Below are positions 12,845 to 61,312 of a stretch of 64,000 nucleotides of DNA, in pieces. The notes beneath the pieces are model-generated. The model was not told the DNA's origin and did not search any database. It saw nothing but the letters and a program-made list of their open reading frames with translations. The stretch's first letter is position 1. Each line of letters opens with the position of its first letter. The stretch comes from Octopus sinensis (Eukaryota): assembly GCF_006345805.1 (NCBI RefSeq), contig NW_021835990.1, positions 62,001-126,000 on the forward strand, given 5' to 3'. The position numbers and the translations under genes were made by a program.

Positions 12845-15259
12845 TCAATATTGGCATAAATGGCCACAACCAGGGCAGGAATCGTGTTTTGAAAACCACT
12901 GGATCATGTGTTCTATGTGTCCACCATGGTTACACTCCTGACACCAAACTCCCAACTTGTTCACGGGTCCCTCACTATACTTAGAATTATGCATCACAAC
13001 CAAAAACAGCACATAAAACCATATTCACCACAGCTAGAACATCTTGAAGACCCCAAATTCATCATTTCACAATGAGACTCGTTTAGACATCGAGGAATAT
13101 AAGAAGCATGATGCAAACTTAATTCCCCGATCTCTTTATAACCACAAAACTTTACAATCTCCGCCTGTTCAACCCAAAGCTCGAATTTTGCCATCAAATC
13201 TAAAACATTAAGTTCCAAAAACACCCAAATAATGAAGAATATATCCAACAGTTCTATCATGATTCAATTTCCCCCTAAACCAGTTTCCGCCCAGTGTGAG
13301 TATCGTCATGACTGCAGTCTGAATGTCTCCCTAAATCAATACGATAAAAAATAACACCATTTCGACAAAATCTTTGACAGTGTCGGTTACATAGCTGATC
13401 AGAATATCGTGACTATCAGCAACGTCTTTGGAATATTCAATTTTCGGCTGGTTTCGTGGAATCAAATACTGATACGAACTGCCACATGTCTCTTCGTCAG
13501 GGTCAATCTAACAATCCAAATTTATGTCTCAAATACATTTCCAGGCCTATCGGGGAAGAAATCAAGCGGATGTTCGTCTGGAATATAATATTCCCGGTCA
13601 TTCTCTTCTGGGCTATCCACACAAGGACTCTCCTTTTCGATAGTCTCGTAAATATTTTTCAATATCAACCAAAAGTACGACGCCTAAAATATAAATATAA
13701 ACCAACTGTGTTTCTTTCCAGTTTTTTGGCCACATCGGAGTTCCTCTGGCATAAAGCCGGAATTGGATCGCCGTGGAATTTCAGTTTTTTAGCCAATTCT
13801 ATAAACCAAGAATTGCAGTCGCTCTAAACCGGTAACTTGTGGTTGTAAACCTCAACACAAACAATATCACTGCATATACTAGCCTTGCCCCAAAAAGGCT
13901 CAATTGAACTCTTTTTCTTTCTAATTGATTTTTTGAGTGCTAAATTCGTCAGAGTTGATTTGTAGTGTTCCTGAGGTCCGTATTTTACATAAACTAGTGT
14001 TCCATCTGATCCTAGTTGAACACAGTTGTTTAATTTATTCATTGATGGAATCGACGACGGTTTTTGGAGTACAAACCGAGTTAGTCGATAGTTTAAACTT
14101 CCAGTGAATAATTCGTCGCCATTTCGACCTCTCCATGTAATATCCACTGAAAAAAGCAACAAAAATACTTGTCGATCTGTCCTGTTGGCTGGAAATCTGA
14201 GCATGCGGAGAAAAAGGGTTTTTCATATCCCAAATATAAATACTACGAGTTGAACAAGTCGAAAGTGTCAAAAACTGGGTTCTTCTATAAAAAATATTTA
14301 TAAAAACCGTGATCCTGGTCTCCAACGGACTTTTAGGACGCTTTCAGAACCAAGATTTATTCGATTGAGTATTTTAGGCTGTGGATCGAAGTCCCATGCC
14401 TAAATCTTAAGAAAGACGGTCACATAAACGTGATTTTGACCATCTCCAGCGGAAAGAATGACATTATAGTCAGCGTGCCAGTCAATTGAGTTTATTCTTC
14501 CCATATGTGCTTGAAAATCCCAAATTGGTTTATTAAAACGGCGTAAATCCCATATTTTGATCTGTCCGTTGACCATCGCTGTGGCCAAAAAATGTGAACG
14601 TGTCTTTTTTGAGAAACGGACGTCGGATATGTCCGACTCGGCATAAATTGACTTAGTTGGACGTCTACATCTTCTATCCTAAAAATCTAAAATATAAATA
14701 TACGAGAATGTTGACTACTCCGTGTTTACGGGCCAGTAATAAATCATTTTTATTGAAAGGGTCGAATGTCACGTGTTCGACAATGTGGGTATTTTCAGGC
14801 TCTTTAGACACTAATTTTTTATAAATATTATAGAATATGTTTATGTATTAAAAAATAAATAATTAATAATCAATTATTAATTACCGTAACAAGGTGTTCG
14901 TGTGTATGGGTGATTGAGGTCCCAGATATAGCAGCTACCACAGTTGTCAAGAGAAGCAAGGATATTTACTATTTTAAAAAAACAAATTCCTTACAATCTA
15001 CTTTATTCCAACTCATATCCGTAATATTCTCCGTTGTTTCCGAACTCGTGAAATTGCTGAGAAGATCGTGAATTTCCTCGGGAAATCCGGTAGACTGGTT
15101 GACGGAATATACGGAAAAAACTGGCTTATATATAATAAGGCTACTATTTCGACCTCCAAGGGCGCAGTGAAACCCTTTCGAGTCGCAGCTGATGACGCTT
15201 ATACGTCCACGTGTCAATAATTGATATTCTTTACAAGAAAGGTCAAAATCTGGGTCCAT
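12845..15259 (-). CDS. WDR24: GATOR2 subunit WDR24, multi-exon
   Basis: WD40 motifs IKIWDLRRF..AHMGRINSIDWH, SVLKVRWRPG and IYIWDMKNPFSP. C-terminal zinc-binding GVWCQECNHGGHIEHMIQWFSKHDSCPGCGHLCQY* fits WDR24 rather than WDR59. Frame is restored by 22-26 nt introns where checked. Confidence 0.92.
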
Positions 15260-15573
15260 GCAAAATAATTTTTTTATTATTTAAATAATTTTCTTTCGTA
15301 AAATAATAAATTTAAAAATTATATTTTTTAATAAAACCATCATTAAGACTTTGTGAATATGATTTACTGTATTTTGATTAAATGAATTTATAATTAGTTT
15401 TCTTATCAAAATTTGTATCGAAAATCTTAAAAAACAAATATCGATTAAAAAATCGCTTGGTTTAAAAATACAAAATTGTCAAGTAAATTTAAATAATTTC
15501 AAATCTAAATAAAAAAATTCAAAATCGAATACAGCAAAAAGACAAATTAAATTAGACAAAATCAAAATTACTT

Positions 15574-16132
15574 TTAATTCGAAGACCAGTATTTTCCAAT
15601 TGTAAAACAGTTTTCAATAGTACTGAGCAAATTAGTACGATCTATTTTATGCTTAGCAAATTTAAACCTGTCATAGTCTGTTTGAGAAGTTTTTTGTTTA
15701 CTGGCTTTATATAGTAAAAAATAAGACCATAATTTGCTATTACAAGCAAAATAATCAAACAAATGAAACATGAATAATCCAACTCGGCACGGATTTTAAA
15801 TTCTTACATTCAAAATAGTCCCAAATATTAATTACTGTGTTGATTGAGAGTTGGACGTAGTCGTAGGTGATTCCACGGTAAACAACAGAGTGACCGCAGT
15901 TTTCCACAATCTAGTAGTCAAAAGAATACTTAAATGCCATTTTTCCTCTAATTTTTTGCACTTTAAAAAGCAACTTTTTGCAATCAATGCAAATGCTAAA
16001 AGGACGAGAATATTTTCCAGCACAATCCATGAAGGACCCCAACTCTCGGCAGTAGTTTACAAGATGCTTGTTACATGTCGATTTATCAGAACTGAGTGCA
16101 TAGCCTATTAAAACGATCGTCAAGACAAGCAT
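15574..16132 (-). CDS. OSTM1: OSTM1-like type I membrane protein (compact)
   Basis: Signal-like MLVLTIVLIGYALS, then Cys pattern C..CRELGSFMDCAGKYSRPFSICIDC and CGHSVV..VINIWDYFEC, similar to the OSTM1 luminal domain. A TM-like segment (IILLVIANYGLIFYYI) plus a basic tail requires one indel in a T-run. The 3' end is approximate. Confidence 0.6.
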
Positions 16133-16154
16133 TGTGGTAAAGTTTTGAAATAAT

Positions 16155-19100
16155 TTACTTTTGATGGTGGAATAACATTGGTCACAAACACGTTGATTTT
16201 TCGAAGCAGCTGCCAACTGAAGTCTACCTGTAGTACACGCAGCGCAGAATATGGCTCCACAACAATGATGCTACCCGATTAACTACTCCTCTAACCTTCT
16301 TACTGTCAGAGAAAAAACTATTTTACAATTAGCACACAGTCGACAATCCTTATCCAAATGCCACTGAGTGTTGGATACTCGATTGGCTATTATCTAAATG
16401 TCTTGGTTACTCCATGTACCTGAAGGGACGAGTTTTCCGTGGCCAATTCACGGATTCCGGTGGTCAGATCAACGTTTTTGAGTTTCATTGCTAAAAACTG
16501 TTCTCTGGTCTCTTCGTCCCGTTCTTCAATCTTGAGATACCAGAGATTTCTTATATTAATACAGTGAATACTTCCAAATTCGCCATTCTTAAATTCGCCA
16601 ATTCTTAGATTCGCCTTTTCAAAAAAAATTCTAGTTTCAATGGAAATTCGCCAATTCTGAAATTCGCCACAATTTTTTAAAATTTTTAAATAAAAAATAA
16701 AAAAAATATGGATAAATAATACATTTTTTAAAAGTTATTGTTCAAGTTCGAAAAAAGACATGAATTCCGTCTGAGAAAATTGCATGGGCAGATGAAAACT
16801 GATAAAAAAAGTTAACATCGAAGGATTTTTAAATGAATTTCAAAATTTATCCAAGTCCTATACTATCGATGAAATACTATGAATTTCAAAATTTATCCAA
16901 GTCCTATACTAACCAGTCAGTCAACACACAACAACCTTCTTTCTCGCTTGTTTGAATTTGTAGTTTGTCTAAGCTTATTTTGAATGAATTTGTTGATTGT
17001 GTCAGCTCAAAGTTTAATTTTGTGATTGAATTGCAATTTTCGTCATTTTTTGCTGTAAATCAGCATTTTGTATTAAAAGGCAGTCAATCTCCTGTTTTCT
17101 AGATATATGGACAGCGTCGGCTTGGTTAATTAGTTCTAAGTATAGGGTTTTCGGATCAATATAATAATTTTTCGAACCAATATAACTTTTCGAATCATAT
17201 AATAATTTTTCGAATCAATATAATAATTTTTCGAATCAATATAATAATTTTTAAATTAAATAAAATTTAAATTTTATTGACCTGAATTTACTGTTAATGG
17301 ATTTACATAATCAAAATGCTTCTGAATATTCAATCGAACCAGCGATGGTTCGCCGACAAATAATATCTAATGATGTGAGGAAAGTTAACAGTATTTTGAA
17401 AAAATTCTTTAAAACGGGGGAAGTTATTCCATCTAAACGTGGTGGAGATAGAAGGTCTAAGCTAACAGACGAAATGAAACAAGAATTAGTTGATTATGTT
17501 GATGAAGATTGCACCAGATCTTTGAAGGATTTGTGCGAATGGATATTTTTTAAATTTAATTTGAAATTATTACTGAGCACCGTCGCCAAGGCTTTAAATT
17601 CTTTTCATTATACTCTTAAAAGAGTTACATTAATGCCAGAAAGAAGAAACTCAGTTTCAACTATAGAAAGCAGAAGACAATATGCATCAGATTTCACAAA
17701 TTTGGAAGCTTTGCATAATGATAAAGCTTTAATATTTTTGGATGAAGTTGGCTTTAAGGTCGTTACAAGACCTTCTCGAGGAAGGATTCATCACTACCGT
17801 GGACTGGAAAATGATACTGAAGTATCAACTATAATCAGGAAATTTTTGCCACCATACTGTCCATTTTTAAATCCTATTGAAAATGTTTTTTCAGTATGGA
17901 AAAACTTGGTAGTCCGTGGGAAAGCCAAGAATGAAAAAGATCTTAGATGCCTAATTACATCTAAATTCAACGAAATAACAAGTGAACATTGCGGATCCTT
18001 CTACAGAAAGATGTTAACGTATTTGAATAGATGCTCAAATTCTGAAGTGATTCAAGAATAACGATAATTTACTCTTTTGATCTTTTTTTCTTTGAATTTC
18101 TTTGAATTAAAAAATTCTTTGAATTTAAAAATTATTATATTGATTCGAAAAATTATTATATTGATTCGAAAAATTATTATATTGGTTCGAAAAATTATTA
18201 TATGATTCGAAAAATTATTATATTTATCCGAAAACCCTATATTATAAAATAGTATTTACAACCTTAAAAACTGAATTTAAATATTTAAAACGATTCAAAA
18301 CATCGAAAAAATAGCATTTAATATGTTCTCCCCTGTCAGCTGACTCCAAACACAGTTCTTTCAGTTCGACTGATCTAAAATGCAGTCTTTCGGCATTGAC
18401 AATCAAATTTATTAGAAAAAGACGATTCTTCTCGGTTTTTGCTTCCCAAATCCTAATCTGATTGGATTGTGATTAACATTTTAATATCAATTTTTGTTGC
18501 GTAAAATTAAAGTTGTATAAACTTTTTTGTGTAATTCGAATCATTCTCAAATCCATCATTCTGAGACACTCGTAAAACTTGTCAATTGATTCGACATTTT
18601 GTTTCAACAAAAGTAGCAAATTAGAATGCTTGTCCAACGTTCTTAATTGAGTACGAACGGAGAACACGAGATTCGTCATTTTTTCAATAATTGGAGTTGT
18701 TTGGGATGCAAAAGTCTCGATTCTCGACATTGTCAATTCAGTCTGATTCATTAATATCCGGATTCGTCGATTACAGTTAATTACTGGCACAAGAAGACGA
18801 CAAGAATCGAATCAATCTCATCTCGATGGCAAACCAGCCTGCCACGTGTCTCATCAACCAATCCTTTTAGGCCAATAACTTCATCTTTCAATAAATTCCA
18901 AGACCCAATTTTCACTTTATTCACTCTAAGGGAGTGTCCAATTATCAGGTTCTTTAAAACTTGTAAATTTTGACTCATTGAACACTGATTGGCCTCCGCA
19001 ACTTGTTTAATATTCGAATAGGCTAAAGATATGTTCGTAAGCCGTGATTTAAAGAGGCCAAGACAAGTCCATTTCCACTCCGCAGATCTGGCAAGTTCAA

Positions 19101-20600
19101 TTTGACGTATAGAATGAGCAAATGTGGCAATTTCCTCGCTTGTAATTTGGAAATGAGACGATATTAATAGTTTTGTGGTGGTCATCTCTTCACGAATTAA
19201 ACTGGCTGTCCTTTTTAATGACTCTCCTGACAATTTCGACTTTCTCCTGTTGACTGTACAACTCAGGATAATTGAATCAAGCATGTTTTTGGACGAAAGA
19301 AGCGAAGTGGCGAGTTTTGGAAGGAAAGTTCGGATTAAACTCATTTTTTGCTCAAGATCACAAAATATCGACATTTTTTGGCCAAGCTTGGCATTTTCTT
19401 GTTCGGTAAAACTGATTTGTTTGGTCAAATCTTCAATCTATGTAAATAAAGCACGTTTTATTCAACTCGACAGGAGCATTCCAGTTCCTTGCATTTCATA
19501 GCTTCGTCAAAAGACGCGGTTTGTTCGATATTCATAATTCGGACTGCCTCGACTTTATTTAAGAGTTTTTCCTAACAAAAACAAACGACTTTCCGACCTG
19601 TTCTGTCCAGAGGACAGTTGGAGACCACCACACTCACTACACTGAAAGGGGGAGGATGTCCATTTATTCAGTGAGGAGAGGACAGTCAGCCAGATTGAGT
19701 GACTCAATGAATGGACAAACCCGACTGACTAGACTACTCCATTACCAACTACTCATCACATCAATTCCATGTTCAAGAAAGTAAAACTAATATCCAGGCT
19801 GCGGTAATGCCATGAGACGTCTCATCCGTCCCCGCCGACTGGACAAAAAAAGAAATCTGAGTCTCAAGTTGTCCAATCTAACCAAAAAGTGTCTCATTTT
19901 TATAAAAAGTCTAAAAATCAGTCCAAACTTAAGACACCTTCTTGAAATAGTAGTCATACTTTGAATATTGGAGACTGTTGACAAAAAACATTTAATAATC
20001 CATTTAATAAACATAAATGAATTAGAAAACAAGTTTTTTGATAGTATTTGTGTTATTGTCAAGTTTTTTCTTAGCGAAATTGCAAGTTTTTGTGATTTTT
20101 TGATATATTTTTGCAGGTTTTGGGCCAATTTATTGACCCGACTTTTTGAAACTTCAATACAAGTTGATTTGGCATGTTTTTTCATCAAATCGAGCCTTCC
20201 TCTCCAATATTCAATCAGATCGGCCTGCTCTTGTCTAAATCGTGCCAAATCTGCTTTGATCTACTAATATAATACATTAAAACAACAAAATTCAATTTTT
20301 TGATGTGCTTTTCTCTGAAAAGTGCCGATTCTGCTCTTAATTTTTGACATTCTTGCTCCAAGTTGGATTTGTGCTTTTCCAACTGTTTCTTTATTAGTTG
20401 AAGGCTGTCAATTTGTTGTTGCATCACATTTTTGTCGTCGGTCAACAATTCTTGTTGTCCATTCTAGTATATATATTTGTGGACTTGATGGGTTGAAAAG
20501 TGAACTGATAATTCTTCGCAAGTATCAAAATTCCCGAAACATGAAGGGCAGACAAATCCTTGGAGGTCATTATTTGTGGATAATTCGTCTTGTGTTGGTT
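16155..20600 (-). CDS. EEA1: EEA1-like long coiled-coil protein with C-terminal FYVE domain; TE-filled intron ~16531-18300
   Basis: ELATENSSLQ/IIANRVSNTQWHLDKDCRLCANCKIVFSLTVRR..HHC.CGAIFCAAC..RVCDQCY matches the EEA1 C-terminus (ELGRENQSLQI..FSVTVRRHHC). Linking it to the coiled-coil ORFs at 18473-20448 is inference, and the 5' end is not located. Confidence 0.62.
16562..16700. mobile_element. Isolated terminus of a pogo-like element with subterminal AAATTCGCC repeats
   Basis: TA followed by CAGTGAATACTTCCAAATTCGCC and about five more AATTCGCC motifs. Same architecture as the pogo TIR and CTCGCC repeats elsewhere in the window. Confidence 0.5.
17143..18239 (+). mobile_element. IS630/Tc1-superfamily element, internally deleted transposase (ORF 17297..18061)
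   Basis: TIRs TAGGGTTTTCGGAT with TA flanks and arrays of ~21-bp TCGAATCAATATAATAATTTT repeats at both ends. Motifs PSKRGGDR, FLDEVGF, FLPPYCPFLNPIENVF. Confidence 0.9.
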
Positions 20601-21857: not shown

Positions 21858-21859
21858 TA

Positions 21860-23328
21860 CAGTGGGCGCAAAAAAAATCCGGTTTTCTTATTTTTCGAAT
21901 TTTTCAATATAAATTTTATATTATTTTTTTTAATTTAGTATCATTTTGAAATGTAAATCGAGTATGTTTTTAATTTTAAGTATTTTTTTATTTTTCATAG
22001 AGATATCTTGAATTTAATTTTAAAATGCGCAAAAAAAACTCGGTTTTTTTAATTATTGAGTCTTTTATTCTCAAAAATTTGAAATTGTTGTCATTTTTGT
22101 TGTTGTTGGATGTCGTGTATTTCAGAAATTGTGAAAGGACAAATTATTCAACTTTATTTCCTTAATTGGACATATAAACAAATTTCAGAAGAAGTAGAAA
22201 TTCCCAGATCAACAGTGGGAGATTACATACGTAAATACAAAAAATATGGAACAACACAGAGACTGTCCGGTTCTGGAAGACCTAGGACATTAAATAATGA
22301 TGATATAAATACTTTATTGACGCTTGTTTCTGACAATCCGAAAAAATCTTCCCGTTGCCTGTCAAAGGATCTTCATTCTTTGACAGGAAAAATCGTCTCA
22401 AAACGAACAATTGGGAATTATCTGAAACAAAAGGAAATATATTCACGTGTGTGTCAAAAAAAACCGTATCTGTCTAAAATTAATATCGAAAAACGATATT
22501 CCTTGTCAAAAAAATTTATCGCACTGAATATGACGTCATGGAAATCAACTATTTTTAGTGATGAATGCTGTTTCGAAATTTTTAATCACAAAAAAAAGGA
22601 ATTTTGTTATAGGAAAAACAACACACGTCTAGAAAAATCGCACTTATCTCCAACTGTTAAATTTGGAGGGGGAAAAATAATGGTGTGGGGATGTTTCGGG
22701 TATTATGGAGTAGGCAATCTAGTATTTATAAATGGAACTATGAACTCAGCAACTTATGTGAACATATTATCAAATAATCTGTGGGAGTCCGCTGCGAAAA
22801 TGTGCTTGAATGAATTCATATTCCAACAAGACATGGCTCCTCCACACACATCAAAGATCACGAAAGATTTCTTTGCCGAAAGAAGCGTCAAACTATTGGA
22901 TTGGGCACCGCAATCGCCAGATTTAAATCCAATAGAACATCTTTGGGCATATATTAAAAGTAAATTGTACGAAAATCCTCCAAAAAATATGCATGAGCTG
23001 AAAGATAAAATTATCGAAATTTGGGAAAATATGCCGAAAGATCTAATACAGAAACTCATAAACAGCATGCCGAGAAGGGTGTACGATGTTTTTATGGCTA
23101 AAGGACGGCATATTAAATATTAATTTGACATTTTTTTAAAAAACCGGGTTTTTTTTTGCGCATTGTAAATTTAAATTGGAAATATCTCTTGAAAAAAATA
23201 ATGAAAATAATCAAAATAAAAAAATAAGAGTTACTTTTCACTAAAATTTAAGATTAAAAAAAAATATTATATCGCACAATATAAAAAAATAGAGAAATTA
23301 GAAAACCGGATTTTTTTTGCGCCCACTG
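21860..23328 (+). mobile_element. Complete Tc1 element
   Basis: TIRs CAGTGGGCGCAAAAAAAATCCGGTTTTCT at both ends, with TA at 21858-59 and 23329-30. Confidence 0.96.
22110..23123 (+). CDS. Intact Tc1 DD34E transposase, 337 aa
   Basis: Uninterrupted ORF with HTH, GSGRPR, FSDECCF, QQDMAPPH and SPDLNPIEHLW. Confidence 0.95.
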   Translation: MSCISEIVKGQIIQLYFLNWTYKQISEEVEIPRSTVGDYIRKYKKYGTTQRLSGSGRPRTLNNDDINTLLTLVSDNPKKSSRCLSKDLHSLTGKIVSKRTIGNYLKQKEIYSRVCQKKPYLSKINIEKRYSLSKKFIALNMTSWKSTIFSDECCFEIFNHKKKEFCYRKNNTRLEKSHLSPTVKFGGGKIMVWGCFGYYGVGNLVFINGTMNSATYVNILSNNLWESAAKMCLNEFIFQQDMAPPHTSKITKDFFAERSVKLLDWAPQSPDLNPIEHLWAYIKSKLYENPPKNMHELKDKIIEIWENMPKDLIQKLINSMPRRVYDVFMAKGRHIKY

Positions 23329-42101: not shown

Positions 42102-42149
42102 ACACTTAATTATTTATAACATTCTAATTATTTATTATTTAAGACAGTA

Positions 42150-43266: not shown

Positions 43267-43419
43267 TAGTCCTCAACTTTTCACCGGGTGAGTTATGAAA
43301 CCAGAATTGATCAAAATAATAGTGTCAACATTAAAAAGTAGAATTGCTAGTTAATCAATATCACTCAGATATAACTATTTTTTCCAAATTAATCAATTAA
43401 ATTCTAATTCATCCACGTT

Positions 43420-44900: not shown

Positions 44901-44949
44901 TTGTTCGGTGCAATCTCGGGAGTTTAGAAGGACAGCAAAGGAGTATATT

Positions 44950-49913: not shown

Positions 49914-50434
49914 TTAATAATAATAATTCGAGTCATAATAATTCCACTGACTAGGGGGATACCCCAGGAAGTACGGATGGGGTATTGAAGGAAGCTCTGG
50001 GGGGACCACGAACTGGTGGTACTCGAATGATTCGGCAGGATGACTGGGGGTAGGGTAGACAGGGTAGGTTGGGGGGACTGCCCCCTTCACCATTCGAGGC
50101 AACTCCCGTCGTCGGGCGTTGATGAACCTGAGTTGAGTGGGGACAATACCAATTGGTCAATTGCAGCATTGTGAGCTTTGTTTGCTCACACAACTTGCGC
50201 TTCTCGTACGCGTCGGGTAGGGATACTACGACCTTGGCAGCCAATACTCACCTCCATGTGCACACACAGCCACGTCTTCAACTTGAGGATGACGTCCTTC
50301 GGAAACAGTCTTGGCTTCTTTCGATGTTTCCGAGTGTTGCTCACTGCAATAATAAGGCCACACATTTTCACATTCAGGAGAGGCCTCCGTTCCGTGCAAT
50401 CTAAGGAGTTACTCACGTGGCATACTTGCTCCAC
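49914..50434 (-). CDS. TGIF-like TALE homeobox protein
   Basis: FPKDVILKLKTWLCVH/YPYPT.YEKRKLCEQTKLTMLQLTNW/FINARRRELPRM, with 26 and 22 nt introns. Needs one extra base near 50210. Confidence 0.85.
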
Positions 50435-50769
50435 TCGACTTGATTTGGAAACTGGAAAGATTAACTCATATCAGTGACATGTCAAAGCATAGCAATACCA
50501 ACCTCCGAGTTGTTCTGAAACGACATTTCGTGCCACAACTTGACGGCAATGACTTACTTATAAGTCGACAGGAGCTGACCGAGATTTTGACACTCCAACA
50601 AATGTTAATATCTTTGATCACTTATTGGTTTGACAGGGATTATCATTAATCAACATTGCACGGCCAGGCTAACATCACACACATCCACAAAACGAAGGCG
50701 GGTTAGTGAGATAATAAAAAAATTATATTATATAAATTTTGTTTAATTAAATAAATACAATATAAAAAT

Positions 50770-51319
50770 GGAAATAATATTTTGTTATATTTTGTGGTCG
50801 TTTTCTATCAATTTACGTTACTCACAATGAAATATGAACAAACAACAAAAAATTGAAAAAATTTTAGAAAATATTATTAATTTCAGTTACTCAAAATATC
50901 CAAAAGTTATCATTCATAAACTACTTTTAAAAGGCATATCATCTCATCAAACAACAAATGATAAAATCACAAATATATGTCATTTAAATATTTTTTACTA
51001 ATTAGGATATCATAACTGAAAATCTCCGAGAAAAGTCAACTCAAATTGAAAAGAATTGCTATGATAATTATGATGATGAAGGTTATTGATTAAAATAATT
51101 CAAAGCTCAAAATTCCTCTGAAAGTAAATATAAAAAATTCTGAAAAAATCCAAAAAAGATGTCTCTAAAAGAAGGAAATGGACCATTGAAGAAGAAATAT
51201 GTTTTTATCGATGTGTGATGGAGATTGGTTGTGGAAAATGGAGCGAGATAAGGGATTTGGGTTATTTTCCTGGGAGAACATCCGTCATGCTTAAGGATAA
51301 GTGGAGGTACATGATCTAA
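50770..51319 (+). CDS. Small TRF-like telobox Myb protein
   Basis: KRRKWTIEEE..GCGKWSEI..FPGRTSVMLKDKWRYMI* is a C-terminal telobox (LKDKWR). Upstream exons joined by short introns; start uncertain. Confidence 0.85.
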
Positions 51320-52249: not shown

Positions 52250-55200
52250 CAGGATGTAGAAAATAGACTTAAGTCCTTAATGGAGGACTCCACTGGGCTT
52301 GATGAAGGTCTTAAATCCAAGGCAGTGGAACTGGAAAGAGCAGTTTTTGAAGCAAAGTCCTTCTTTGAAGAGCAGCTTAAACAAAATAAGGTTTTGGAAG
52401 AGAACGAGCACAAAACAAAATCAAAAATCGACGAATTATTCTATCAAGTGACACATTTTGATGAAAAATTACAAATTTATGAAATTATTGAACACGGAGA
52501 CGTGAAAGGGGCCATTTCTGAGTTGAAAGTATTTAATTTGTGTATTTTTTAGACATTAAAAACTGATTTAATTCAAATTAGATTTGATTTTTTTGATAAA
52601 ATTGAATTGTCAGTAGAAATGGCAGATTCTTTGGAAAACTTAAAAAATCAAATTCAGAAAATTAAAGTAAAAAACGACAAAATTTGCAAAAATTTGGAAA
52701 TTTGGAACTGTTTTAGCAGTTTTTGTGAGCAAATTGAGGTCAAATTCTGCCAATTTTAAAAATAGATTTCGATTTGTCGTTGGGAACAAACAGAATTTTT
52801 GGAAGAATCAGACTTTGATGGAGCAAGGAGACAAATTGAGGAATTTGGACGTCAGATTAACTCTTGGGAGGACTCTTGCAGTTCCTGTGACATTGAGCAA
52901 ATTTTAATTCCGTTAACGATCACAAAAAACGGAGAGAAAATTACATTTAAAGTAATTCCCAACACTAAAATCAAATTAGTCCCAATTTTTACAACTAAAA
53001 ACAAAAATGACTAAATTTTACGACAAAATTGAAGCTCAGGAAAACAAACTTCGAGCAAATAAAATTCTAAAAAACCAATTTGATGCAAAAACTGGCGAAT
53101 TGAAAACTTGGCTGGCATCTTGTCAAAGGAAAGTTAATCGACAAGACCGGTTGGCTGTGACTTGAATCACCTGAAAGAGCCGTGTGAAAATTGTCAAGTT
53201 AAATAAAATTGTTTAACAATTCAAAGGGTATTTTGAATGAAATTGATGCGAATAAAAACGAATTTTCACTCGTTATATCACTTTCAGAACAAATGTTAGA
53301 CACTGATCCAAATAATTTAGCAATCAAATCTTTTTGCACATTTTTTGGAGAACATCTGGCGGATCTTGAAGCTGAGACGACAAATCAGTCAAAGGACTTG
53401 CAGGATTTGTTTGAAAATGGCCGGGAATGTCAGAACATGTATCAAATCTGCCTAGAAATGCTAAACCACTAGATGACGATATTCTTATGAGGAACGTGGA
53501 AGAATTGGAAATGGAAAAATTCAAAACTAATTATTCTGTGAATTAATTTATTCATTTTAAGAAAATAAATCAAGAAATTGGACAACTTGACAAGTCAATG
53601 ATTGGACTAAAACAATCCGTGGATGTTTTCCGATCAAAATTACGCAATTTCAGAGTTTTTGAGGAACCCTTTAAAGCTGTGATTGATTTAGAAAAGTCTA
53701 AAATAAAGAAAGAACACGTTGAAATTGTTTTAATAATAAATTTCTTAGAACTGATGGTAGACGACCCGAATAGTTCAGAGGCAGCTCGGAATCTAGAAGT
53801 GGTTGATTATTAATTTGATCTTATAAACAGGACATTGAACGACATTTTACGGAAGGGGAATTAACCATAGAAAAGATTCTTACGCTGACTGATCAATTTG
53901 GACAAAATAAACAAAGAATTGTAGAAAAACATAAAAATGGGAATTTTTGAGAGAAAAGTTCAAAACGGACAAAAAACGTTCAAACAAAATTGAAGAAGCA
54001 TATCAACTTATTGCACAATTTTCCGATGAATTAGATCAAAGCAAATCAAAAATTGAACAATAGCAAGCAAAGACAAAAAATATTTCTCACAAACCACTTT
54101 CTTGTCTTCCCGAAGTGATTTCAAGCTCACAAGTTTGTTAATTACACTAAAATCAAAGCAAATCAAGAGATCCCTTGAGAGACTACATCCTTTGTTGATA
54201 GAAATACAAAATTTAGGATCATTTCCTTTAAATAATAAAATAAGTCAACTTGTATCGGAATATGAGGAAATGAAACAGAAGAACCAAGTCAGTTCACGTT
54301 TTCTCAGGTCATATTCTCCGATGCAAAGCGAATAAACCAAATCATCAACTTAGTCAATGAACCAAACTATCCAATACAAAACAAAATCTAAAAAAGACCG
54401 CTTTCGAGATTGAACATCTAAAAAAACAGTCTCCAGTGAGTAGACAAGATTTCATCAATTCTGAGAAAATAATCAACGTTTTTCTATTAAAACGAATAAA
54501 TCAAATTTAGAAAGTGACAGAGGCATTGAGTGAATGTAAAATAAGTTTGGAACAGTTCAATATGGACTATTACGATGTTCTCTCTAAGGAAGGGACTGTC
54601 GATTGTGCTAACTTTTTAAAAAACTCATTTGAGGATAGCCAAAGAGAAATGGCTCAACAAAAATCAGAATTGGACGGATATAGAAAATATTTGGGTGATA
54701 TAATAGCATATGACTGGTTTATAGACGAAATATCTAAAGTTATCGACCAAAATGAAGCCAGGAAGAAAGATTTGAAGGAATGGATCGAAAGATCGGAATT
54801 TTTTATTAAAAATTTACCACCAAAACTCACCTTTGATCAAATCAAGGAACTGAGGGTCTATTTGACTGTAAACATTGTCAGAAAATACGATCGGATATTC
54901 CAAGTTATTCGGTTACCATTACCCAACTGTTGGGAAGGGATGACTCCGAACTGGCCAGTATTCGGAATAGATTAAACGAAATTGAAGCAATGTGTAATTT
55001 AGTCATTTTGATAGAATGTAAATGTGTATTAGAAGAGAGATTTTGGGGATAAAGGTAACTGTGATCTTCTCGTGGAAGCAAATCAGTTCCTTCAGTGGAT
55101 ATCTGAAATGTGGAGAGAAATCGAGGCTGTAAATGACACTACACAGAACCTCCAAAAGACCAAAGAAAATCTCAAATCCATAAACGTGTGTTAACAGTGT

Positions 55201-55930
55201 CTAAGCCAATAGGAGCTGATAAAAAGAATAGAACGAGGAAATTCAGATCTTGATGAGATTGTAAGAAAAAGCAGTCCCAATGAAGAATTTGAACTTAGAA
55301 CCGACACTGGAAAACTAACGTCGGAGTATAATTCCCTTCTCCAATCAGCCACTGAAATACACGATAAATTAGAAAAATTTGTTAATGAGACGACGAAAAC
55401 TAATTTGGCTGATAAATATCTATGGGAAGAGATCGAGAGATTGATTAGTCAGACAGAACAATTTATTCGAGACGACGACCGAGTCGAATTGGCTGATATA
55501 ACATCCAGAGCTAATGAAATTTCGGTTTTATGATATTGTGGCTCAAATTGTAAGAATTGCTTCACAAATGCATGTGAATTGGCTCAAAAAGTCGATTCCG
55601 TATTTCAGCCAAGTTTGGGGCAGATGGACGTGATTGTGGACAAGGCACAAGTCTACATGGGGAAATTGAGAGACCAAATTGTTAAATTGAGGGTTAGGTC
55701 CTTCAAAGAGTTATTTAAAAGACGTTGAAGGAATATTGGGATACCGTTCAAAAAACATGCAAAATATATTTTGACAAGAAAAATCAGTTTATTGCCGAAA
55801 AAAGAAAATTTGAAAAAATTATAAAATTCCCGCCTTCTGCAAAAACAGGGGAATTGATAAACGAAACAAATTTCAGAGAACTATGTTACGTAATATCAAT
55901 TTATATGAATTTGACAGGAAATGAGTGAAA
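52250..55930 (+). CDS. Spectrin-repeat / long helical protein (nesprin-, dystrophin- or plakin-like), multi-exon
   Basis: Successive helical E/K/L-rich ORFs with periodic Trp motifs (ELKTWL, DLKEWIE, FLQWISE), separated by short GT..AG introns. Some in-frame stops are unresolved. Confidence 0.55.
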
Positions 55931-57083
55931 GTAAAAATTCAGCAGACAACTACTTTTCCATTTTCACGAAATCTTATGAAAATGCAGAACAAACAATAAA
56001 AGGAAACTTACTCAAACAGTCAATCACACAGGATTATGACCTGGAAGAGTAGGGATATAAAGAGCGTATGAATAACATAAAAGTGGTGTGGTGTGGTTAT
56101 TGTGTGAATGAAGTTTGTGAAAGTGTGTGATGATGACTGTTCGGAGGTGATTGAACTGCCATTGGAAAAGTGTGGAAACTTGTTGGTGGGGACTTTAAGA
56201 ATCTGCGACTTTATACGATAAGAAAATTTAAATTTGACTACAGTGGGTCATGTATTTGACTGATTAGTGGACGGGTATCTAAAACCAAAACTATTTTAGA
56301 TTATGTGTTATCCTGAGCTGATTTGTTCGCTTTTTATCAAGAGTGATCTCGTTCGGACTGTTTAGATGATCGATAGGGTCACTTTTATGATGAGAACGTG
56401 TATTATTTTTTTAAAAAAGTCGTGTTAACATTTTTGGGCCTCTTAAATTACAGTCAAACCTCTCTAATTTATCACCTCTATGATGTGCCACTATTTTTTC
56501 ACCAAAAAAATTGAAATTCTTTTTTCTCTTATGTTTTTCTATTTTTTTACTATTTTTCTAATTTTTACAGCTTGTTTCAGCTTATTAAAATTTTTTATTA
56601 ATGTTTATTAATTAATTTAGCTAAATGCTTAATTAATTGGTTAAAAATTAATCACGTCCTCTTGTCTGTTCTTGTGGTGAATCGTTATGTTTTTATATGT
56701 AAGTTTATCAAAATACAGGTTATTTCCATTAAAAAACTATGTCGCTGGTAATTAACAGTCGCTCTAAATTTAACAGAAAAATTCGGTATTATTGAATACT
56801 GCAAAAAAACAAACATGTAAAATATACTTTTTCTCTAAATGAAAATTTGAGTTCTATACCACGAAATCTGAATTTCAAAACTATTGTCTCTAAGTTAAAG
56901 GAATGCGTCGCTTTATTTAGTCGTTCATTGATCGCATGCTTAGGCAAGAGTTTGCTCTCCAGTATTTGCTCCAGTGTTTTTTTGATTACGACATGAATTT
57001 GCGCTAAATTAAGATTCTTTGACAATTTATTAAGTTTAGGGCTGGCTATCCATAAATTTTAATTTTAACATTTATTATTTTTT

Positions 57084-58339
57084 TCAAACTACTTTATTAC
57101 CCCAACAAAGGAGATTAATTAAAAATAAAATTAACTTAATCAAAGGAGCTGTCCCCTTCCGAAGTCTGGAGACCAGTCTCTTCTGCTTCTGGTCGAAAGA
57201 ACACCTCGAGAAAGTGTTTTCCAACCGATCCTGCTGCCTATAAAACATTAAGGGATGGATCTGCGTGTAATATACTTTCTGGAGTCCTCTTGGGGACAAT
57301 GGACTGCATATAGGGCTGGCCGTAATTTTATATCAAATATCCATTTGAATATTCTATAGTTCAAGTTCTCGATTTATTTTCGGTATTATTTCAGGAATCA
57401 ATAACTAACAGAGGTCAGACGATGAATAATCAACGTAAATTATTTTCCCAGTAAGAAGCCCAAAGGTGTCTTAGAGCCCTCGTCCACAAAAATTCAAAAA
57501 AGATTCAAAGCCGATTAATTTATTATTTATTAACTCCAAGATCACAGAGAAAGATAGATCAGAACTAACTTCTATCAGTAGTAAAGAGGGTAAATTGAGA
57601 TTTAGATGCAGACACACACAACATGTTTGCAGATAGCCAATCACATACACGGTTGAGGTGTGACTGGACCATTGCGACAGCCACAGAAGGAGATTTATCC
57701 CTTGCAGCGATAATCAGGTCGTCCGCATAGAATAAGAACATAATTTCCGGGTCATTAGTAATGGGTAGGTCATGTAAAAATAGGTTAAAAAGGAGGGGAG
57801 ATAAAGGGGAGCCTTGTGGGACACCATTGGGCAGTAGTATTGATCTTGAAGTAGTATTGTCAATACGGACCCTTCCGCGTCGGCCAGTTAAGAAATTTTC
57901 CAACCACAGTTTGATTTTCGGATGTAAGTTCGAATCGAATATCTTCCGCCTTAGGAGTTTCCTCGGGACAGAATCAAAAGCCTTTTGTATATCGATGGAT
58001 ACTAAGGCCGTCCGTAGGTGTGTTCCCATGTTGAAACCGTCAGTAATAAACTGGGAGACAGAACATAAATGGGTCGTTGTAAAACGGAATGGTCTAAAAC
58101 CGTGCTGGAATTCTGGCAGTTGTAGAAAAGGACAGCTTTTCCAGTACTTTCGATAAGATACAAGTTATTGAGATCGGGCGGTATGAAGAGGGGACATCCT
58201 TTGGTTTCCCAGGCTTTAGAATTGGCGTAATTAGGGAGTTTTTCCATATATTAGGGATAATCGGGAATGACAATGTGGAGAATATTTGCATGGACAAATT
58301 CGATCGAATGCTGGATATTAATTTGCGGTTTGATTGCAC
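57084..58339 (-). mobile_element. Jockey/I-like LINE RT fragment
   Basis: WKNSLITPILKPGK..SYRPIS, DIQKAFDSV, GVPQGSPLSPLLFNLF, YADD. Confidence 0.92.
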
Positions 58340-58374
58340 ACACTAATAAAGTGCCCCACTCTACTTAATCAAGT

Positions 58375-58860
58375 TGGCCACTCCTGGCTGAGACTGAAGG
58401 GAGTATTGTCAATGTGTCCAGCATAACTGGCACTCGAGCTGTAAGTCCTCTCCCTACTCTCCAGTTCCCCAATGTCCTCTCCTACTGCATCTCCAAAAGT
58501 GCTCTTGACCAACTCACCAAGTGTGCTTCCCTCGGTAGATTCCCCACTCACTCCATAGAGTTGGGTCCCCGCCAAATCAGGGTTAACTCAGTCAAGTCGG
58601 TCATTACTCTTTAGTCCGGGGATCATCCTCACACAACTCCACAGGTCTTCGGGCATTGAGGAGGAGGCCTACCAGCAAGTACAACCTCAGTCATATTCAC
58701 AGTTCCTCGAACGTGGGAGACAAGTCCACCCTCTTCGTAGAAACGGACTGCCCGAGGAAGTAGCAGAGGCAGTTCTCTTCTTGACCGACAAAAACAAGAG
58801 CGGGTTCATCACCGGAGAATTGCTGCATGTGGATGGGGGTAAATTAAATAATGTGGCACT
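58375..58860 (+). CDS. Classical short-chain dehydrogenase/reductase (FabG-like), 3' half; 5' replaced by the LINE
   Basis: GSIVNVSS, YCISK (YxxxK), IRVNSVNPG, HPL.R.G.PEEVA..V.FL and FITG....VDGG. Introns of 24, 24, 19 and 24 nt. The 3' end is approximate. Confidence 0.88.
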
Positions 58861-58936
58861 TAATCATAATAAAGTAAAATATTTTTTTCAAAATGGATTT
58901 TATTTTGCAATGGTGCAAGTCCATAATATGGTTTAG

Positions 58937-61312
58937 TTAATCTGGAGGATCACATTTCTCGTCAAACGAAAACGAGGAGGTGCCAGTATTAAAAAAACAG
59001 AGACATTCACACCCATAGACCGGACAGACACTAAAACGTCTCTCGATAGAAAATTCAAAGTACCGAAACCAGTCTACGAGATGTTGACTATGTCCCCCAT
59101 GGTGACAGTGTAAACAGAATGCGAACCACTTGCCAACACGAGTGGCCTTATCCCCGCTGTCCAAAGAGTACACGTTGACTATCCTCCTGCATACTGAACA
59201 ATGTGGCTGAGGGTTGACACAATACTGGCATGCCCCTGCCTACAATATATCGAGACTCCTTCCTTGTTTACACGAGCCTGTGGGTAGATTCGCTTCACGT
59301 CCTCTTGGTTCGCTTCCAGGTCGATTTTAAACTTACGGAATGAAAGACTCCGGTGACATAATATGCACAGCAAATCCACTCTCCTGTGACAAACTCTCAT
59401 TCCTCGGGACTCCAAAAATCGATCAAACTTAATCCTTCAATATTCAGACATTCACCACCTCAGCTCCCACCAACGCAGGGAATTTAATAAGCTTCTGTAT
59501 TTTTTAATGTTTTCTTCGAAGAATCGGTTTTTCTGGAAGTCTACCCCCACTGAAAGGGCCATCGAGAGACTCGTTTGGTAATCCCCCGTCATTTCCGTGT
59601 AATTCTTTAACAGCTCAGGTACTCGATCAGCCATTCCTGCCAAGAACAGACCAGTCAGGTCAGCCTTGTCCACACAAACTTGCACGATTCTCTCTAAACA
59701 AGGTTCCAACTGAGAGATCATTCTATTCTAAATAACCTGTTCGTCCTGAAATTGGCCAGTCAACAACATGATTCGGTCCTCAACTTTGAGACCAGATTCC
59801 ATCGTGATCGTCTCAATTGACGATTCCATTTCGCGAGAAGACGTCCTGCAGTTTACTCTCGCTTGATTGTAGCATATTGAGAGCAACTGTTTCTTGTTCA
59901 ATCCTTCTTTTTTAGACATCATTTTGAGGGTGAGTACTGAAAAATAAACTCAGAGGAATACAGCAGTCCAACTGTCTCCAACCTTCACAAAGACATGTCC
60001 CTTCCTCCAACTCTTTGGGGGACTATCATGTGAGTAATCCACCACCAAACTGATAATATTCCATAATCTTCCCTTATTTTAGATTCTTTTCTTTTCTGAT
60101 AAATTGATGTTGATGATATGTCTTCCCGATAATCATGAGAATAGTCCAAATAGTTGTGAAAATTGAAGGAACAGTCCAAGTCTGCCACCTCCTTTCCAAC
60201 TCCGTAAACGAAAGTATCAGCTAATCCTGAGAACAAAGCAAAGTCTCGAATCTTTCTCTCTGACTTCATGACCATAGTGCCCTCATGACCTCCAATCTTC
60301 CTCTCGACTGATCTTCTTTCATATATCATATTTTCCGTGACAACGACGGAGACTCCATGTTTCACTGGAGACCAGTGGACGGATACAAGTTTTGGATAAT
60401 CAGCTTGTTCTATCTACCAGCATATCATCACAAATTAACTGGAGTCCTCGAATTTCTCAAATCCCACCAAAAAATGGCATTTTCTTTGGTAGAAATAAAC
60501 AAGTGATCAACTTGGGGACAGACTGAGAGGGATTTTGTTCGAGGAGAACTTGCCAGGTGAACACCAGACTGTCCTGAAAATATCGAGAAAGGGTACCTCT
60601 TATGTCGAGTATTTTAATATTCAAAGGGTTACTGAATATGACAACTCTACTGTCATTGTGGCAAGAGAAGCAGTCAATCATGGCTGAGGACTCTACACGT
60701 AACAGATGTGGTTATCCACGGAGTTGGTAGATCGGACTGAGATTAGAACAGGTTCGATCAAAGTGCCAAACAGAGAGGACAGATGAGGAAAATGAGTTGT
60801 GACAGTCGGATACGCCGATCAGCTATGAAATATAAAAATATATTTATACTGAGGGAGACTGGTATTCTCTATTCCACCCAAATAGTCTAGTTTTGGGAGG
60901 GTTGTTGGCTGCAGTTTAGAGGAAAGTATACCATAACAGAGGGGTGACCGAGTCTCTTGGTCGTACGACAGACTAAGAGTTATATAATTGGAGAATAAAC
61001 TTAACAAACATGTCAGTGTCATTGTGGCTGGAATATGCTATCAGATCTTGGAATTGTCCCAATTTGAACCATGCAATGGACTTAATAAATAATCACGTGT
61101 TACCAATGTTCCTCCCTGGTGTTTGAATGTACGTACAAGACGGGAATATTTGTGGGCAGGTTCATCACCGACTGTAGGCTAATTGGGAGGACTATACATG
61201 TTCCGTTGATAAGGGGGCAGTACTCGGGGGAATACTTGTATATCAACAAACTTTTTTCGCATTTGAGGGCAAACTTTCTTGGACTATTCAGTGGCCATTC
61301 AAGCCTATTCAT
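58937..61312 (-). CDS. MIOS: GATOR2 subunit MIOS, multi-exon
   Basis: N-terminal LEWPLNSPRKFAL..LLIY, DLTGLFLAG..LLKNYTEMTGDYQT, KYRSLLNSLRWW, and C-terminal WFAFCLHCHHGGHSQHL.DWF..CPVYGCECLC. Confidence 0.92.

What the first reader, a model, noticed from the sequence alone, without database searches (positions are those of the whole stretch)
12845..61312. Three TORC1-pathway genes (WDR24, RPTOR, MIOS) co-located on one strand
Seen: three apparently full-length genes, all on the minus strand within ~48.5 kb, among only about 16 host genes. Established: WDR24 and MIOS are GATOR2 subunits acting upstream of Raptor-containing mTORC1 at the lysosome, and the human genes are on different chromosomes. 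Two further neighbours (OSTM1-like, EEA1-like) are endolysosomal. Inference: this may be a functional gene cluster for nutrient sensing in a reduced parasite, or it may be chance or scaffolding.
Basis: partly seen in the sequence, partly recalled or inferred. Interest (0 to 1): 0.75.

Follow-up and report, generated by a model that had tools for sequence, protein, structure and literature searches.

The report
Three TORC1-pathway genes lying close together
Genes for WDR24, Raptor and MIOS really do lie within 48.5 kb on one strand of what looks like a dicyemid parasite genome, but nothing tested shows more than a coincidence of gene order in a very small gene set.

Summary
Three intron-containing genes lie on the minus strand:
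- WDR24-like, 12845-15259, 686 aa.
- RPTOR-like, 38235-42101, about 1152 aa.
- MIOS-like, 58937-61312, about 681 aa.

Each matches its named human protein best, along most of its length. The EEA1-like neighbour is well supported. The OSTM1-like one falls below the Pfam threshold.

Introns have a median length of about 26 nt. GC is 35.7% and transposons are abundant. This fits a dicyemid such as Dicyema (inference; no close relative is in any database searched).

The three genes are not an operon. At least 10 unrelated genes, six of them on the plus strand, five kinds of transposon and a 3.3-kb satellite lie between them. Their upstream regions share no k-mers.

Under random gene order in a 5,012-gene genome, a pre-chosen pathway of 12-30 genes gives such a triplet in 0.5-8% of trials. 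Across 50-150 pathway-sized sets, 1-3.5 triplets are expected genome-wide.

Chance is therefore the best-supported reading. Selection for clustering, or an inherited old linkage, cannot be excluded without the whole genome and a relative. RPTOR carries one in-frame TAG that only an unusual intron would remove.

The parts
12845..15259 (-). WDR24-like gene (GATOR2 subunit): 13 exons, 686 aa, stop TGA, introns 22-74 nt (median 25.5), intron GC 21%.
   Evidence: Reading of three frames and the curated model. PDB: human WDR24 6.5e-58 over nearly its whole length, WDR59 4.3e-15. Pfam WD40 families.
15574..16132 (-). OSTM1-like small gene. The ATG is at 16132, followed by a hydrophobic leader and then a cysteine-rich stretch. 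The 3' end is uncertain.
   Evidence: Pfam OSTMP1 is the only hit, E=4.9e-4, 19.9 bits, below the 25.8 cut-off. No PDB match. Sequence read.
16133..20570 (-). EEA1-like gene: coiled-coil exons at about 18.2-20.6 kb and a C-terminal FYVE finger at about 16.14-16.4 kb. A Tc1/mariner copy (17264-18058, + strand) lies between them. Limits are approximate.
   Evidence: PDB 1JOC EEA1 9e-14, including the coiled coil ahead of the FYVE finger. Pfam FYVE 1.1e-8. DDE_3 in the inserted ORF.
23987..27311 (.). Satellite array with a 96-bp unit, about 35 copies, 97% matches. It lies between the WDR24 block and RPTOR.
   Evidence: Tandem Repeats Finder.
33466..33873 (-). Single-exon RING-H2 finger gene, unrelated to TORC1.
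   Evidence: Pfam zf-RING_2 1.6e-12.
38235..42101 (-). RPTOR-like gene: 17 exons, about 1152 aa, stop TGA, introns 22-34 nt (median 25.5). The 5' half has 50% GC. The 3' limit is approximate.
   Evidence: Curated from three-frame reading. PDB RAPTOR1 2.6e-53, human RPTOR 1.5e-48. Pfam Raptor_N 62 bits. 535 Raptor-family hits among 1.84 billion representatives, all at most 41% identical. The named ones are Raptor or Kog1.
41317..41319 (-). In-frame TAG inside RPTOR exon 5. It follows a stretch (VLLSLNLYDLAS) that aligns with a segment present in plant and human Raptor.
   Evidence: It would be removed only by a 27-nt GC-AG intron (41305-41331) or a 45-nt GT-AG intron (41317-41361).
40531..40558 (-). 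A 28-nt GC-AG intron is needed to join RPTOR exons 6 and 7.
   Evidence: No GT donor is available, and the junction restores the frame and the homology.
43295..45404 (+). NPL4-like gene, next to RPTOR on the opposite strand. Limits are approximate.
   Evidence: Pfam NPL4 2.1e-59.
45677..46045 (+). Homeodomain exon. The NK-like class is judged by eye and was not tested.
   Evidence: Pfam Homeodomain 3.4e-16.
49428..49769 (+). Exon with a PDZ domain.
   Evidence: Pfam PDZ 3.4e-5.
49914..50526 (-). Candidate TALE-class homeobox gene. It is called by eye from the motif WF(I)NARRR, with no Pfam hit.
   Evidence: ORF translations. The Pfam hits on the joined query fall in the neighbouring homeobox part, not here.
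51100..51319 (+). Exon with a Myb/SANT-like domain.
   Evidence: Pfam Myb_DNA-binding 4.6e-9.
52280..56052 (+). Long coiled-coil protein gene (about 1046 aa in the model) with no family assigned.
   Evidence: Model. No Pfam family above threshold.
58290..58936 (+). Short-chain dehydrogenase gene (C-terminal part). Its stop codon TAG (58934-58936) directly touches the MIOS stop codon.
   Evidence: Pfam adh_short_C2 1.4e-16. Sequence read.
58937..61312 (-). MIOS-like gene (GATOR2 subunit): about 13 exons, about 681 aa, stop TAA, introns 23-42 nt (median 26.5). The N-terminal exons are the least certain.
   Evidence: Curated model. PDB human MIOS 8.9e-28, yeast Sea4 6.9e-12. Pfam zinc_ribbon_16 6.2e-9.
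5654..7015 (+). SPT5-like gene, C-terminal half (KOW4, KOWx, KOW5 and a TPSYPQ repeat). It lies outside the span of the finding.
   Evidence: Pfam KOW5_SPT5 1.2e-21, KOW4_SPT5 1.4e-10.
57568..58164 (-). Reverse-transcriptase ORF of a retroelement, between the coiled-coil gene and the dehydrogenase/MIOS pair.
   Evidence: Pfam RVT_1 6.2e-28.
28068..28826 (+). PIF1-like helicase ORF. Whether it belongs to a Helitron-type element was not tested.
   Evidence: Pfam PIF1 1e-19.
22083..23120 (+). Tc1/mariner transposase ORF.
   Evidence: Pfam HTH_Tnp_Tc3_2 3.9e-14, DDE_3 3.7e-8.

Best explanation
The window holds ordinary, very divergent copies of WDR24, RPTOR and MIOS. Each occurs once in the window. 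The source is an animal with ultra-short introns, most likely a dicyemid.

By homology, the proteins should do what they do elsewhere. WDR24 and MIOS are part of the GATOR2 complex, which relays amino-acid sufficiency. Raptor is the substrate-recruiting subunit of TORC1 at the lysosome.

Their closeness in the genome is most likely an accident of gene order. With only about 5,000 genes, mostly conserved housekeeping ones, members of one pathway fall near each other fairly often. They are separate transcription units, not an operon or a co-regulated block.

Shown: gene identity, structure, strand, spacing and the intervening content. Inferred: the organism, the protein functions, and the absence of co-regulation.
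For: Identity:
- Searches give best matches to the named proteins over most of their length.

Same genome:
- All three genes have the same intron length signature (medians 25.5, 25.5 and 26.5 nt). The window has no N.

Not one unit:
- Between WDR24 and MIOS lie at least 10 unrelated genes. Six are on the plus strand: NPL4, homeobox, PDZ, Myb, coiled-coil and SDR.
- Also between them are Tc1/mariner, PIF1-helicase, pogo, endonuclease and reverse-transcriptase ORFs and a 3.3-kb satellite.

No shared cis signal:
- No non-trivial 7- to 10-mers are shared by the three 400-bp upstream regions, against about 5.7 shared 7-mers expected from shuffles.

Chance:
- In 5,012 genes, a pre-chosen pathway of 12-30 genes puts at least 3 members within 15 genes in 0.5-8% of trials.
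- Across 50-150 sets of 20 genes, 1.1-3.5 such triplets are expected per genome, and the probability of at least one is 0.68-0.96.

Controls:
- In three other compact eukaryotic contigs, the 10 kb on each side of Raptor hold no GATOR2 or NPL4 gene.
- One of them has ATG12 next to Raptor. That shows pathway-related neighbours do turn up by accident.
Against: - For this one pathway the spacing is nominally rare: 0.5-8% by gene order and 0.03-2% by base pairs.
- Two more neighbours are endolysosomal (EEA1-like, and more weakly OSTM1-like), giving 5 of about 17 genes. For a category that makes up 3-10% of genes, the probability of at least 5 of 17 is 1e-4 to 0.02 per window.
- Dicyemids feed by endocytosis (PMC6736024), so a nutrient-sensing neighbourhood has a plausible biological story.
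- The gene number used (5,012) is that of Dicyema japonicum, and the organism assignment is an inference.
- The absence of a shared motif in three sequences is weak negative evidence.
Confidence: 0.65

Rival explanations
1. This is a selected nutrient-sensing neighbourhood. In a parasite that lives by endocytosis, the genes for GATOR2 subunits, Raptor and endolysosomal proteins (EEA1-like, OSTM1-like) are kept together. They would share a chromatin domain or long-range regulation and so be co-expressed.
For: - Nominal rarity of the triplet for one pathway.
- 5 of about 17 genes are endolysosomal or TORC1-related (binomial).
- WDR24, the OSTM1-like gene and the EEA1-like gene are directly adjacent on one strand.
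- Dicyemids take up nutrients by endocytosis (PMC6736024).
Against: - The category was defined after seeing the data.
- Unrelated genes on both strands and many transposons are interleaved.
- The upstream regions share no k-mers.
- Several such triplets are expected by chance per genome.
- No conservation or expression data exist here. No paper was found that reports a cluster of TORC1-pathway genes with one another.
- OSTM1-like is below threshold.
Confidence: 0.1
2. This is a remnant of old linkage. The genes already lay on one ancestral chromosome. Massive gene loss and compaction in the parasite removed what lay between them. The proximity would then be non-random but without function.
For: - The genome type is strongly reduced (PMC6736024: 5,012 genes).
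- RPTOR lies next to NPL4 here. From my own knowledge, the human genes RPTOR and NPLOC4 are both at 17q25.3.
- Also from memory, and not tested: human RPTOR (17q25), MIOS (7p21) and EEA1 (12q22) lie on chromosomes of the Hox paralogy group (2, 7, 12, 17).
Against: - I could run no test of ancestral linkage groups.
- WDR24 (16p13.3 in human) does not fit the same paralogy group.
- Dicyemid Hox genes are reported as not clustered (PMC6736024), which suggests heavy rearrangement.
Confidence: 0.17
3. This is an assembly artefact. A misjoin inside a repeat (a transposon copy or the 96-bp satellite) brought together blocks that are not neighbours in the real chromosome.
For: - The blocks are separated by repeat-rich stretches and a 3.3-kb satellite.
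- Composition differs between blocks: WDR24 introns are 21% GC and RPTOR introns 44% GC.
Against: - The window has no N.
- All three genes share the same ultra-short intron signature, so they come from the same kind of genome.
- Even if one junction were false, two of the three genes could remain linked.
Confidence: 0.05

Closest known systems
GATOR2 (WDR24, MIOS, WDR59, SEH1L, SEC13) and mTORC1 (MTOR, RPTOR, MLST8) of human; SEACAT and TORC1 (Kog1) of yeast
   Same: Domain order and best sequence matches agree with these proteins.
- WDR24-like has a WD40 propeller, a helical region and a C-terminal zinc-binding RING with the ...WCQxCxHGGH...CPGCGHxC pattern.
- MIOS-like has a WD40 part, a helical part and zinc_ribbon_16.
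- RPTOR-like has the caspase-like Raptor_N domain, a helical middle and a C-terminal WD40 region.
   Different: - The sequences are very divergent. The Raptor exon tested is at most 41% identical to any of 535 family representatives.
- The proteins are shorter than the human ones: 686 against 790, 681 against 875, and 1152 against 1335 residues.
- In human the three genes are on chromosomes 16, 17 and 7 (my own knowledge). Here they span 48.5 kb.
Ancient linkage of Nprl3 (GATOR1) with the alpha-globin genes in vertebrates (PMC11933693)
   Same: An mTORC1-pathway gene is held next to other genes.
   Different: - There the partner genes are unrelated in pathway, and the linkage is explained by enhancers embedded in Nprl3.
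- That linkage is demonstrated by conservation over more than 500 million years.
- Here there is no conservation or enhancer evidence.
Operons of nematodes and tunicates; metabolic gene clusters of fungi and plants
   Same: Genes that are not homologous but serve one process lie close together.
   Different: - Those clusters are contiguous and either co-transcribed or co-regulated. In operons the genes are also on one strand with very short spacers.
- Here the spacers are 23 and 17 kb. They hold genes on the opposite strand, transposons and a satellite.

Membership tests
WDR24 (GATOR2 / Sea2) | Closer to WDR24 than to the paralogous GATOR2 subunits WDR59 and MIOS. | tested here: met
   Human WDR24 6.5e-58; WDR59 4.3e-15; MIOS 1.8e-5, through the RING only.
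WDR24 (GATOR2 / Sea2) | An N-terminal WD40 propeller, a helical region and a C-terminal zinc-binding RING, covering the protein end to end. | tested here: met
   Residues 43-454 align to 44-456 and residues 530-686 to 636-789 of the 790-residue human chain, ending on the same ...CPxGCGHLC.Y. Pfam finds WD40 families at 69-326.
MIOS (GATOR2 / Sea4) | C-terminal zinc ribbon / RING and helical region of MIOS type. | tested here: met
   Pfam zinc_ribbon_16 6.2e-9. Residues 416-664 align to 601-860 of human MIOS. Overall E=8.9e-28; Sea4 6.9e-12.
MIOS (GATOR2 / Sea4) | N-terminal WD40 propeller of MIOS type. | tested here: inconclusive
   Residues 142-277 align to 165-307 of human MIOS, with a per-stretch E-value of only 7e-4. 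Pfam MIOS_WD40 was not detected. The N-terminal exon junctions are uncertain.
RPTOR / Kog1 (TORC1) | Raptor N-terminal caspase-like domain. | tested here: met
   Pfam PF14538 scores 62 bits against a cut-off of 27, covering profile positions 6-151 of 151. Residues 27-539 align to 105-604 of Arabidopsis RAPTOR1.
RPTOR / Kog1 (TORC1) | C-terminal WD40 propeller. | tested here: met
   Residues 895-1047 align to 1124-1277 of human RPTOR. Pfam beta-propeller families match at 883-1088, all below their own cut-offs.
RPTOR / Kog1 (TORC1) | An uninterrupted reading frame (a working gene). | tested here: inconclusive
   An in-frame TAG lies at 41317-41319. A 27-nt GC-AG intron or a 45-nt GT-AG intron would remove it. 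All other junctions keep the frame. Transcript data are needed.
Functional gene cluster or operon | Members are contiguous, or nearly so, without unrelated genes on the other strand. | tested here: not met
   At least 10 unrelated genes lie between them, six on the plus strand, together with transposons and a satellite.
Functional gene cluster or operon | Proximity beyond what random gene order gives. | tested here: inconclusive
   0.5-8% for one pre-chosen pathway, but 1.1-3.5 such triplets are expected per genome over 50-150 gene sets. The real genome-wide gene order is not available.
Functional gene cluster or operon | Shared regulation or co-expression. | not testable with these tools
   Only a proxy was tested: the three 400-bp upstream regions share no 7- to 10-mers. 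No expression data were available.
Functional gene cluster or operon | Linkage conserved in relatives. | not testable with these tools
   No relative is in the collections. Distant Raptor loci show no such neighbours.
EEA1 | A long coiled coil followed by a C-terminal FYVE finger, with the best match to EEA1. | tested here: met
   1JOC (EEA1) scores 9e-14, against 6.6e-9 for the next FYVE protein. The alignment includes the pre-FYVE coiled coil. The N-terminal zinc finger of EEA1 was not examined.
OSTM1 | The OSTMP1 domain above Pfam's threshold, with a C-terminal membrane span. | tested here: not met
   19.9 bits against a cut-off of 25.8, covering only profile positions 1-41 of 240. No PDB match. 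No clear C-terminal membrane span in the models.

The most novel reading that the evidence does not exclude
In dicyemids, which feed only by endocytosis, extreme genome reduction has been accompanied by selection. That selection keeps lysosomal nutrient-sensing genes (WDR24, MIOS, RPTOR) and endolysosomal genes (EEA1-like, OSTM1-like) in one co-regulated chromosomal neighbourhood. This would be a pathway-level gene cluster, which is rare in animals.
Probability: 0.07. Interest if true: 0.65.

Novelty: new member of a known kind. Interest (0 to 1): 0.2.

Why it matters
If the linkage were conserved and co-regulated, it would be a rare animal example of a pathway-level cluster of non-homologous genes. 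It would also tie genome architecture to an endocytic parasitic way of feeding.

As it stands, the useful results are more modest:
- This very reduced animal keeps the amino-acid-sensing branch (GATOR2) and Raptor.
- Gene models are given for three very divergent orthologues that word-index homology searches miss.
- In a 5,000-gene genome, three pathway members in one 64-kb window is about what random order produces somewhere.

Tried and rejected
- **Word-index homology searches.** These gave nothing useful. A 245-aa RPTOR ORF gave no hit. Full RPTOR gave 7 distant hits, the best a plant protein at 27% identity. A joined WDR24+NPL4 query gave none. So no synteny test through relatives was possible.
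- **Exact look-up of two single-ORF products of the window.** Neither is on record.
- **Automatic gene models from my own dynamic-programming script.** Longest-ORF scoring and a small codon table both mis-spliced. They skipped true stop codons, read wrong frames in the GC-rich RPTOR 5' half and merged neighbouring genes. The three focal genes were therefore curated by hand from three-frame views. Neighbour models are approximate.
- **Rfam and tRNA scans.** Nothing found.
- **Literature.** No paper reports a cluster of TORC1-pathway genes with one another, or TOR in dicyemids.
- **Rejected: a ciliate-type genetic code as the explanation for the in-frame TAG.** It is the only in-frame stop in the three curated genes, and the gene content is animal-like (homeobox, DAXX-like, OSTM1-like genes).
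- **Rejected: a myxobolid origin, as less likely.** No close Raptor exists among 1.84 billion representatives. From memory, one myxobolid proteome is public.
- **Rejected: the 25-nt GT-AG intron at the TAG.** It shifts the frame out of the conserved DRKTL..L.W segment.

Full report
**What the window is.**
The 64-kb window has 35.7% GC and no N. It is eukaryotic and rich in transposons:
- endonuclease and reverse-transcriptase ORFs of retroelements;
- three Tc1/mariner copies;
- a PIF1-like helicase ORF;
- a pogo/Tigger fragment;
- a 96-bp satellite of about 35 copies at 23987-27311.

The host genes have extremely short GT-AG introns. In the three focal genes the medians are 25.5, 25.5 and 26.5 nt. 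Among animals, introns under 30 nt are reported only for myxobolid myxozoans and the dicyemid Dicyema japonicum (PMC13644364).

Dicyema sp. has a median intron of 27 bp (PMC6543705). D. japonicum has 36.7% GC, 48.9% repeats, 67.5 Mb and 5,012 genes (PMC6736024). No close relative of the window's Raptor exists among 1.84 billion representative proteins: the best is 41% identical, and the named top hits are scattered over protists and fungi. The window's own products are not on record.

I therefore take the source to be a dicyemid. This is an inference, not a demonstration.

**Checking the observation.**
I read the three regions in three frames and curated the splice junctions by hand.

| Gene | Span (minus strand) | Exons | Length | Best matches |
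|---|---|---|---|---|
| WDR24-like | 12845-15259 | 13 | 686 aa | human WDR24 6.5e-58, nearly end to end, down to the C-terminal ...WCQxCxHGGH...CPGCGHLCQY; WDR59 4.3e-15 |
| MIOS-like | 58937-61312 | about 13 | 681 aa | human MIOS 8.9e-28; yeast Sea4 6.9e-12; Pfam zinc_ribbon_16 |
| RPTOR-like | 38235-42101 | 17 | about 1152 aa | Arabidopsis RAPTOR1 2.6e-53; human RPTOR 1.5e-48; Raptor_N 62 bits against a cut-off of 27; a C-terminal WD40 part |

- The propeller part of the MIOS-like protein is only weakly recognisable.
- A full HMMER search with one RPTOR exon found 535 family members. Every named one is Raptor or Kog1.

One caveat applies to 'full-length'. RPTOR exon 5 has an in-frame TAG at 41317-41319. 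It lies just after a stretch that aligns with a segment present in plant and human Raptor. Only a 27-nt GC-AG intron or a 45-nt GT-AG intron removes it in frame. The gene already needs one GC-AG intron, at 40531-40558. Every other junction keeps the frame, so I regard the gene as probably intact, but this needs transcripts.

**The neighbours.**
I count about 17 non-transposon genes.

- Minus strand: WDR24-like, an OSTM1-like small gene, an EEA1-like gene, a RING-H2 gene, RPTOR-like, a candidate TALE homeobox, an unassigned gene at 51.4-51.9 kb, and MIOS-like.
- Plus strand: a DAXX-like ORF, SPT5-like, NPL4-like, a homeobox, PDZ, Myb/SANT, a long coiled-coil protein, a short-chain dehydrogenase, and an unassigned gene at 61.5-62.2 kb.

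The EEA1-like call is good. 1JOC scores 9e-14, and the alignment extends into the coiled coil before the FYVE finger. The OSTM1-like call is weak. OSTMP1 is the only Pfam hit but lies below threshold (19.9 against 25.8 bits, first 41 of 240 profile positions), and there is no PDB match.

**Is it one unit?**
No. WDR24 and RPTOR are 23 kb apart, and RPTOR and MIOS are 17 kb apart. The spacers hold genes on the opposite strand, transposons on both strands and the satellite. An operon or a single transcript is therefore excluded. The three 400-bp upstream regions share no non-trivial 7- to 10-mers, where shuffles give about 5.7 shared 7-mers. Their GC content also differs widely (19%, 40% and 35%). 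No structured RNA or tRNA lies in the window.

**Is it more than chance?**
I assumed 5,012 genes in random order and a span of 15 genes.
- A pre-chosen pathway of 12, 18, 21 or 30 genes has at least 3 members that close in 0.5%, 1.6%, 2.8% or 7.9% of trials.
- Counted in base pairs the figures are 0.03-2%.

That is nominally unusual. However, the pathway was chosen after seeing the window. With 50-150 disjoint sets of 20 genes, random order gives 1.1-3.5 sets with such a triplet per genome, and at least one in 68-96% of genomes.

Counting five 'endolysosomal or TORC1' genes among 17 gives 1e-4 to 0.02 per window, depending on how broad the category is taken to be. That is 0.03 to about 7 windows per genome.

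The data therefore do not reject chance. They cannot prove it either, because the real genome-wide order is not available here.

As an illustration, a yeast contig fetched as a control has ATG12 directly next to Raptor. None of three distant Raptor loci has a GATOR2 or NPL4 neighbour.

**Explanations.**
- **Best (0.65).** These are genuine, separately transcribed orthologues whose proximity is a coincidence of order in a small gene set.
- **Rival: remnant of old linkage (0.17).** Ancestral linkage was condensed by gene loss. The only hints come from my own knowledge of human map positions: RPTOR and NPLOC4 are both at 17q25.3, and RPTOR, MIOS and EEA1 lie on Hox-paralogy chromosomes. This was not tested.
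- **Rival: selected, co-regulated nutrient-sensing neighbourhood (0.10).** It is attractive because dicyemids feed by endocytosis (PMC6736024), but no positive evidence supports it.
- **Rival: misjoin in a repeat (0.05).** The window has no N, and all three genes carry the same intron signature.

**Comparison with what is known.**
The proteins are members of the WDR24, MIOS and Raptor families by the features I could test. They are very divergent and somewhat shorter than the human proteins. The arrangement is not a member of any known class of gene cluster: it fails contiguity, and conservation and co-expression could not be tested. The nearest documented case of an mTORC1-pathway gene held in linkage is Nprl3 with alpha-globin (PMC11933693). 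That linkage rests on embedded enhancers and 500 million years of conservation, neither of which is shown here. I found no paper that reports a cluster of TORC1-pathway genes with one another.

**Verdict.**
The 'functional cluster' reading is unsupported and chance is adequate. Interest is low (0.2). The decisive tests are a genome-wide permutation on the real gene order, synteny in a second dicyemid, and RNA-seq.

Noticed in passing
window 41305-41361 (minus strand): RPTOR has an in-frame TAG (41317-41319) in a homologous stretch. It could be a sequencing error, a nonsense allele in a heterozygous genome, or an unusual intron (27-nt GC-AG or 45-nt GT-AG).
   Followed up: partly
window 40531-40558 (minus strand): RPTOR exons 6 and 7 can be joined only by a 28-nt intron that starts with GC (GCACTC...TTTAG). 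Two GC-AG introns in one gene would be unusual.
   Followed up: partly
window 15911-16200 (minus strand): The EEA1-like reading frame has no stop after its FYVE finger. It runs in frame into the ATG (16132), the hydrophobic leader and the cysteine-rich start of the OSTM1-like gene. The two are either overlapping genes or a fusion protein: cytosolic EEA1 part, then a membrane span, then a luminal OSTM1-like part.
   Followed up: partly
window 58934-58939: The stop codons of the convergent dehydrogenase gene (+, TAG 58934-58936) and the MIOS-like gene (-, TAA 58937-58939) touch each other. Their 3' untranslated regions must therefore overlap.
   Followed up: yes
window 23987-27311: A satellite of about 35 copies of a 96-bp unit (97% matches) carries open reading frames through many units. 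It is a likely place for assembly collapse.
   Followed up: partly
window 36000-46000 compared with 12000-16000: There is strong local composition contrast within one contig. RPTOR's 5' half has 50% GC and its introns 44%, whereas WDR24's introns have 21% GC. The intron lengths are nevertheless the same.
   Followed up: partly
window 38235-45404: RPTOR-like and NPL4-like are direct neighbours, head to head. From my own knowledge, human RPTOR and NPLOC4 are both at 17q25.3. This may be an old linkage.
   Followed up: no
window 17264-18058: A Tc1/mariner copy on the plus strand lies between the coiled-coil exons and the FYVE exons of the EEA1-like gene. Either this gene has one very long intron in a genome of 26-nt introns, or it is disrupted.
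   Followed up: no
window 3895-4387 (+): A small ORF matches the histone-binding domain of DAXX (Pfam PF20920, E=3.2e-7).
   Followed up: no
window 12552-12981 and 31212-32275: The same repeated element (translations share ...TVKPLVLAIFGTEEKMASNRIWRAMEIINKF...) lies directly downstream of the WDR24 stop codon and again at 31-32 kb, next to a pogo/Tigger fragment.
   Followed up: no
L003 8862-15726 (Rhodosporidiobolus lusitaniae contig): An ATG12-like gene lies directly beside the Raptor/Kog1 gene. This is an example of pathway-related neighbours in an unrelated genome.
   Followed up: no
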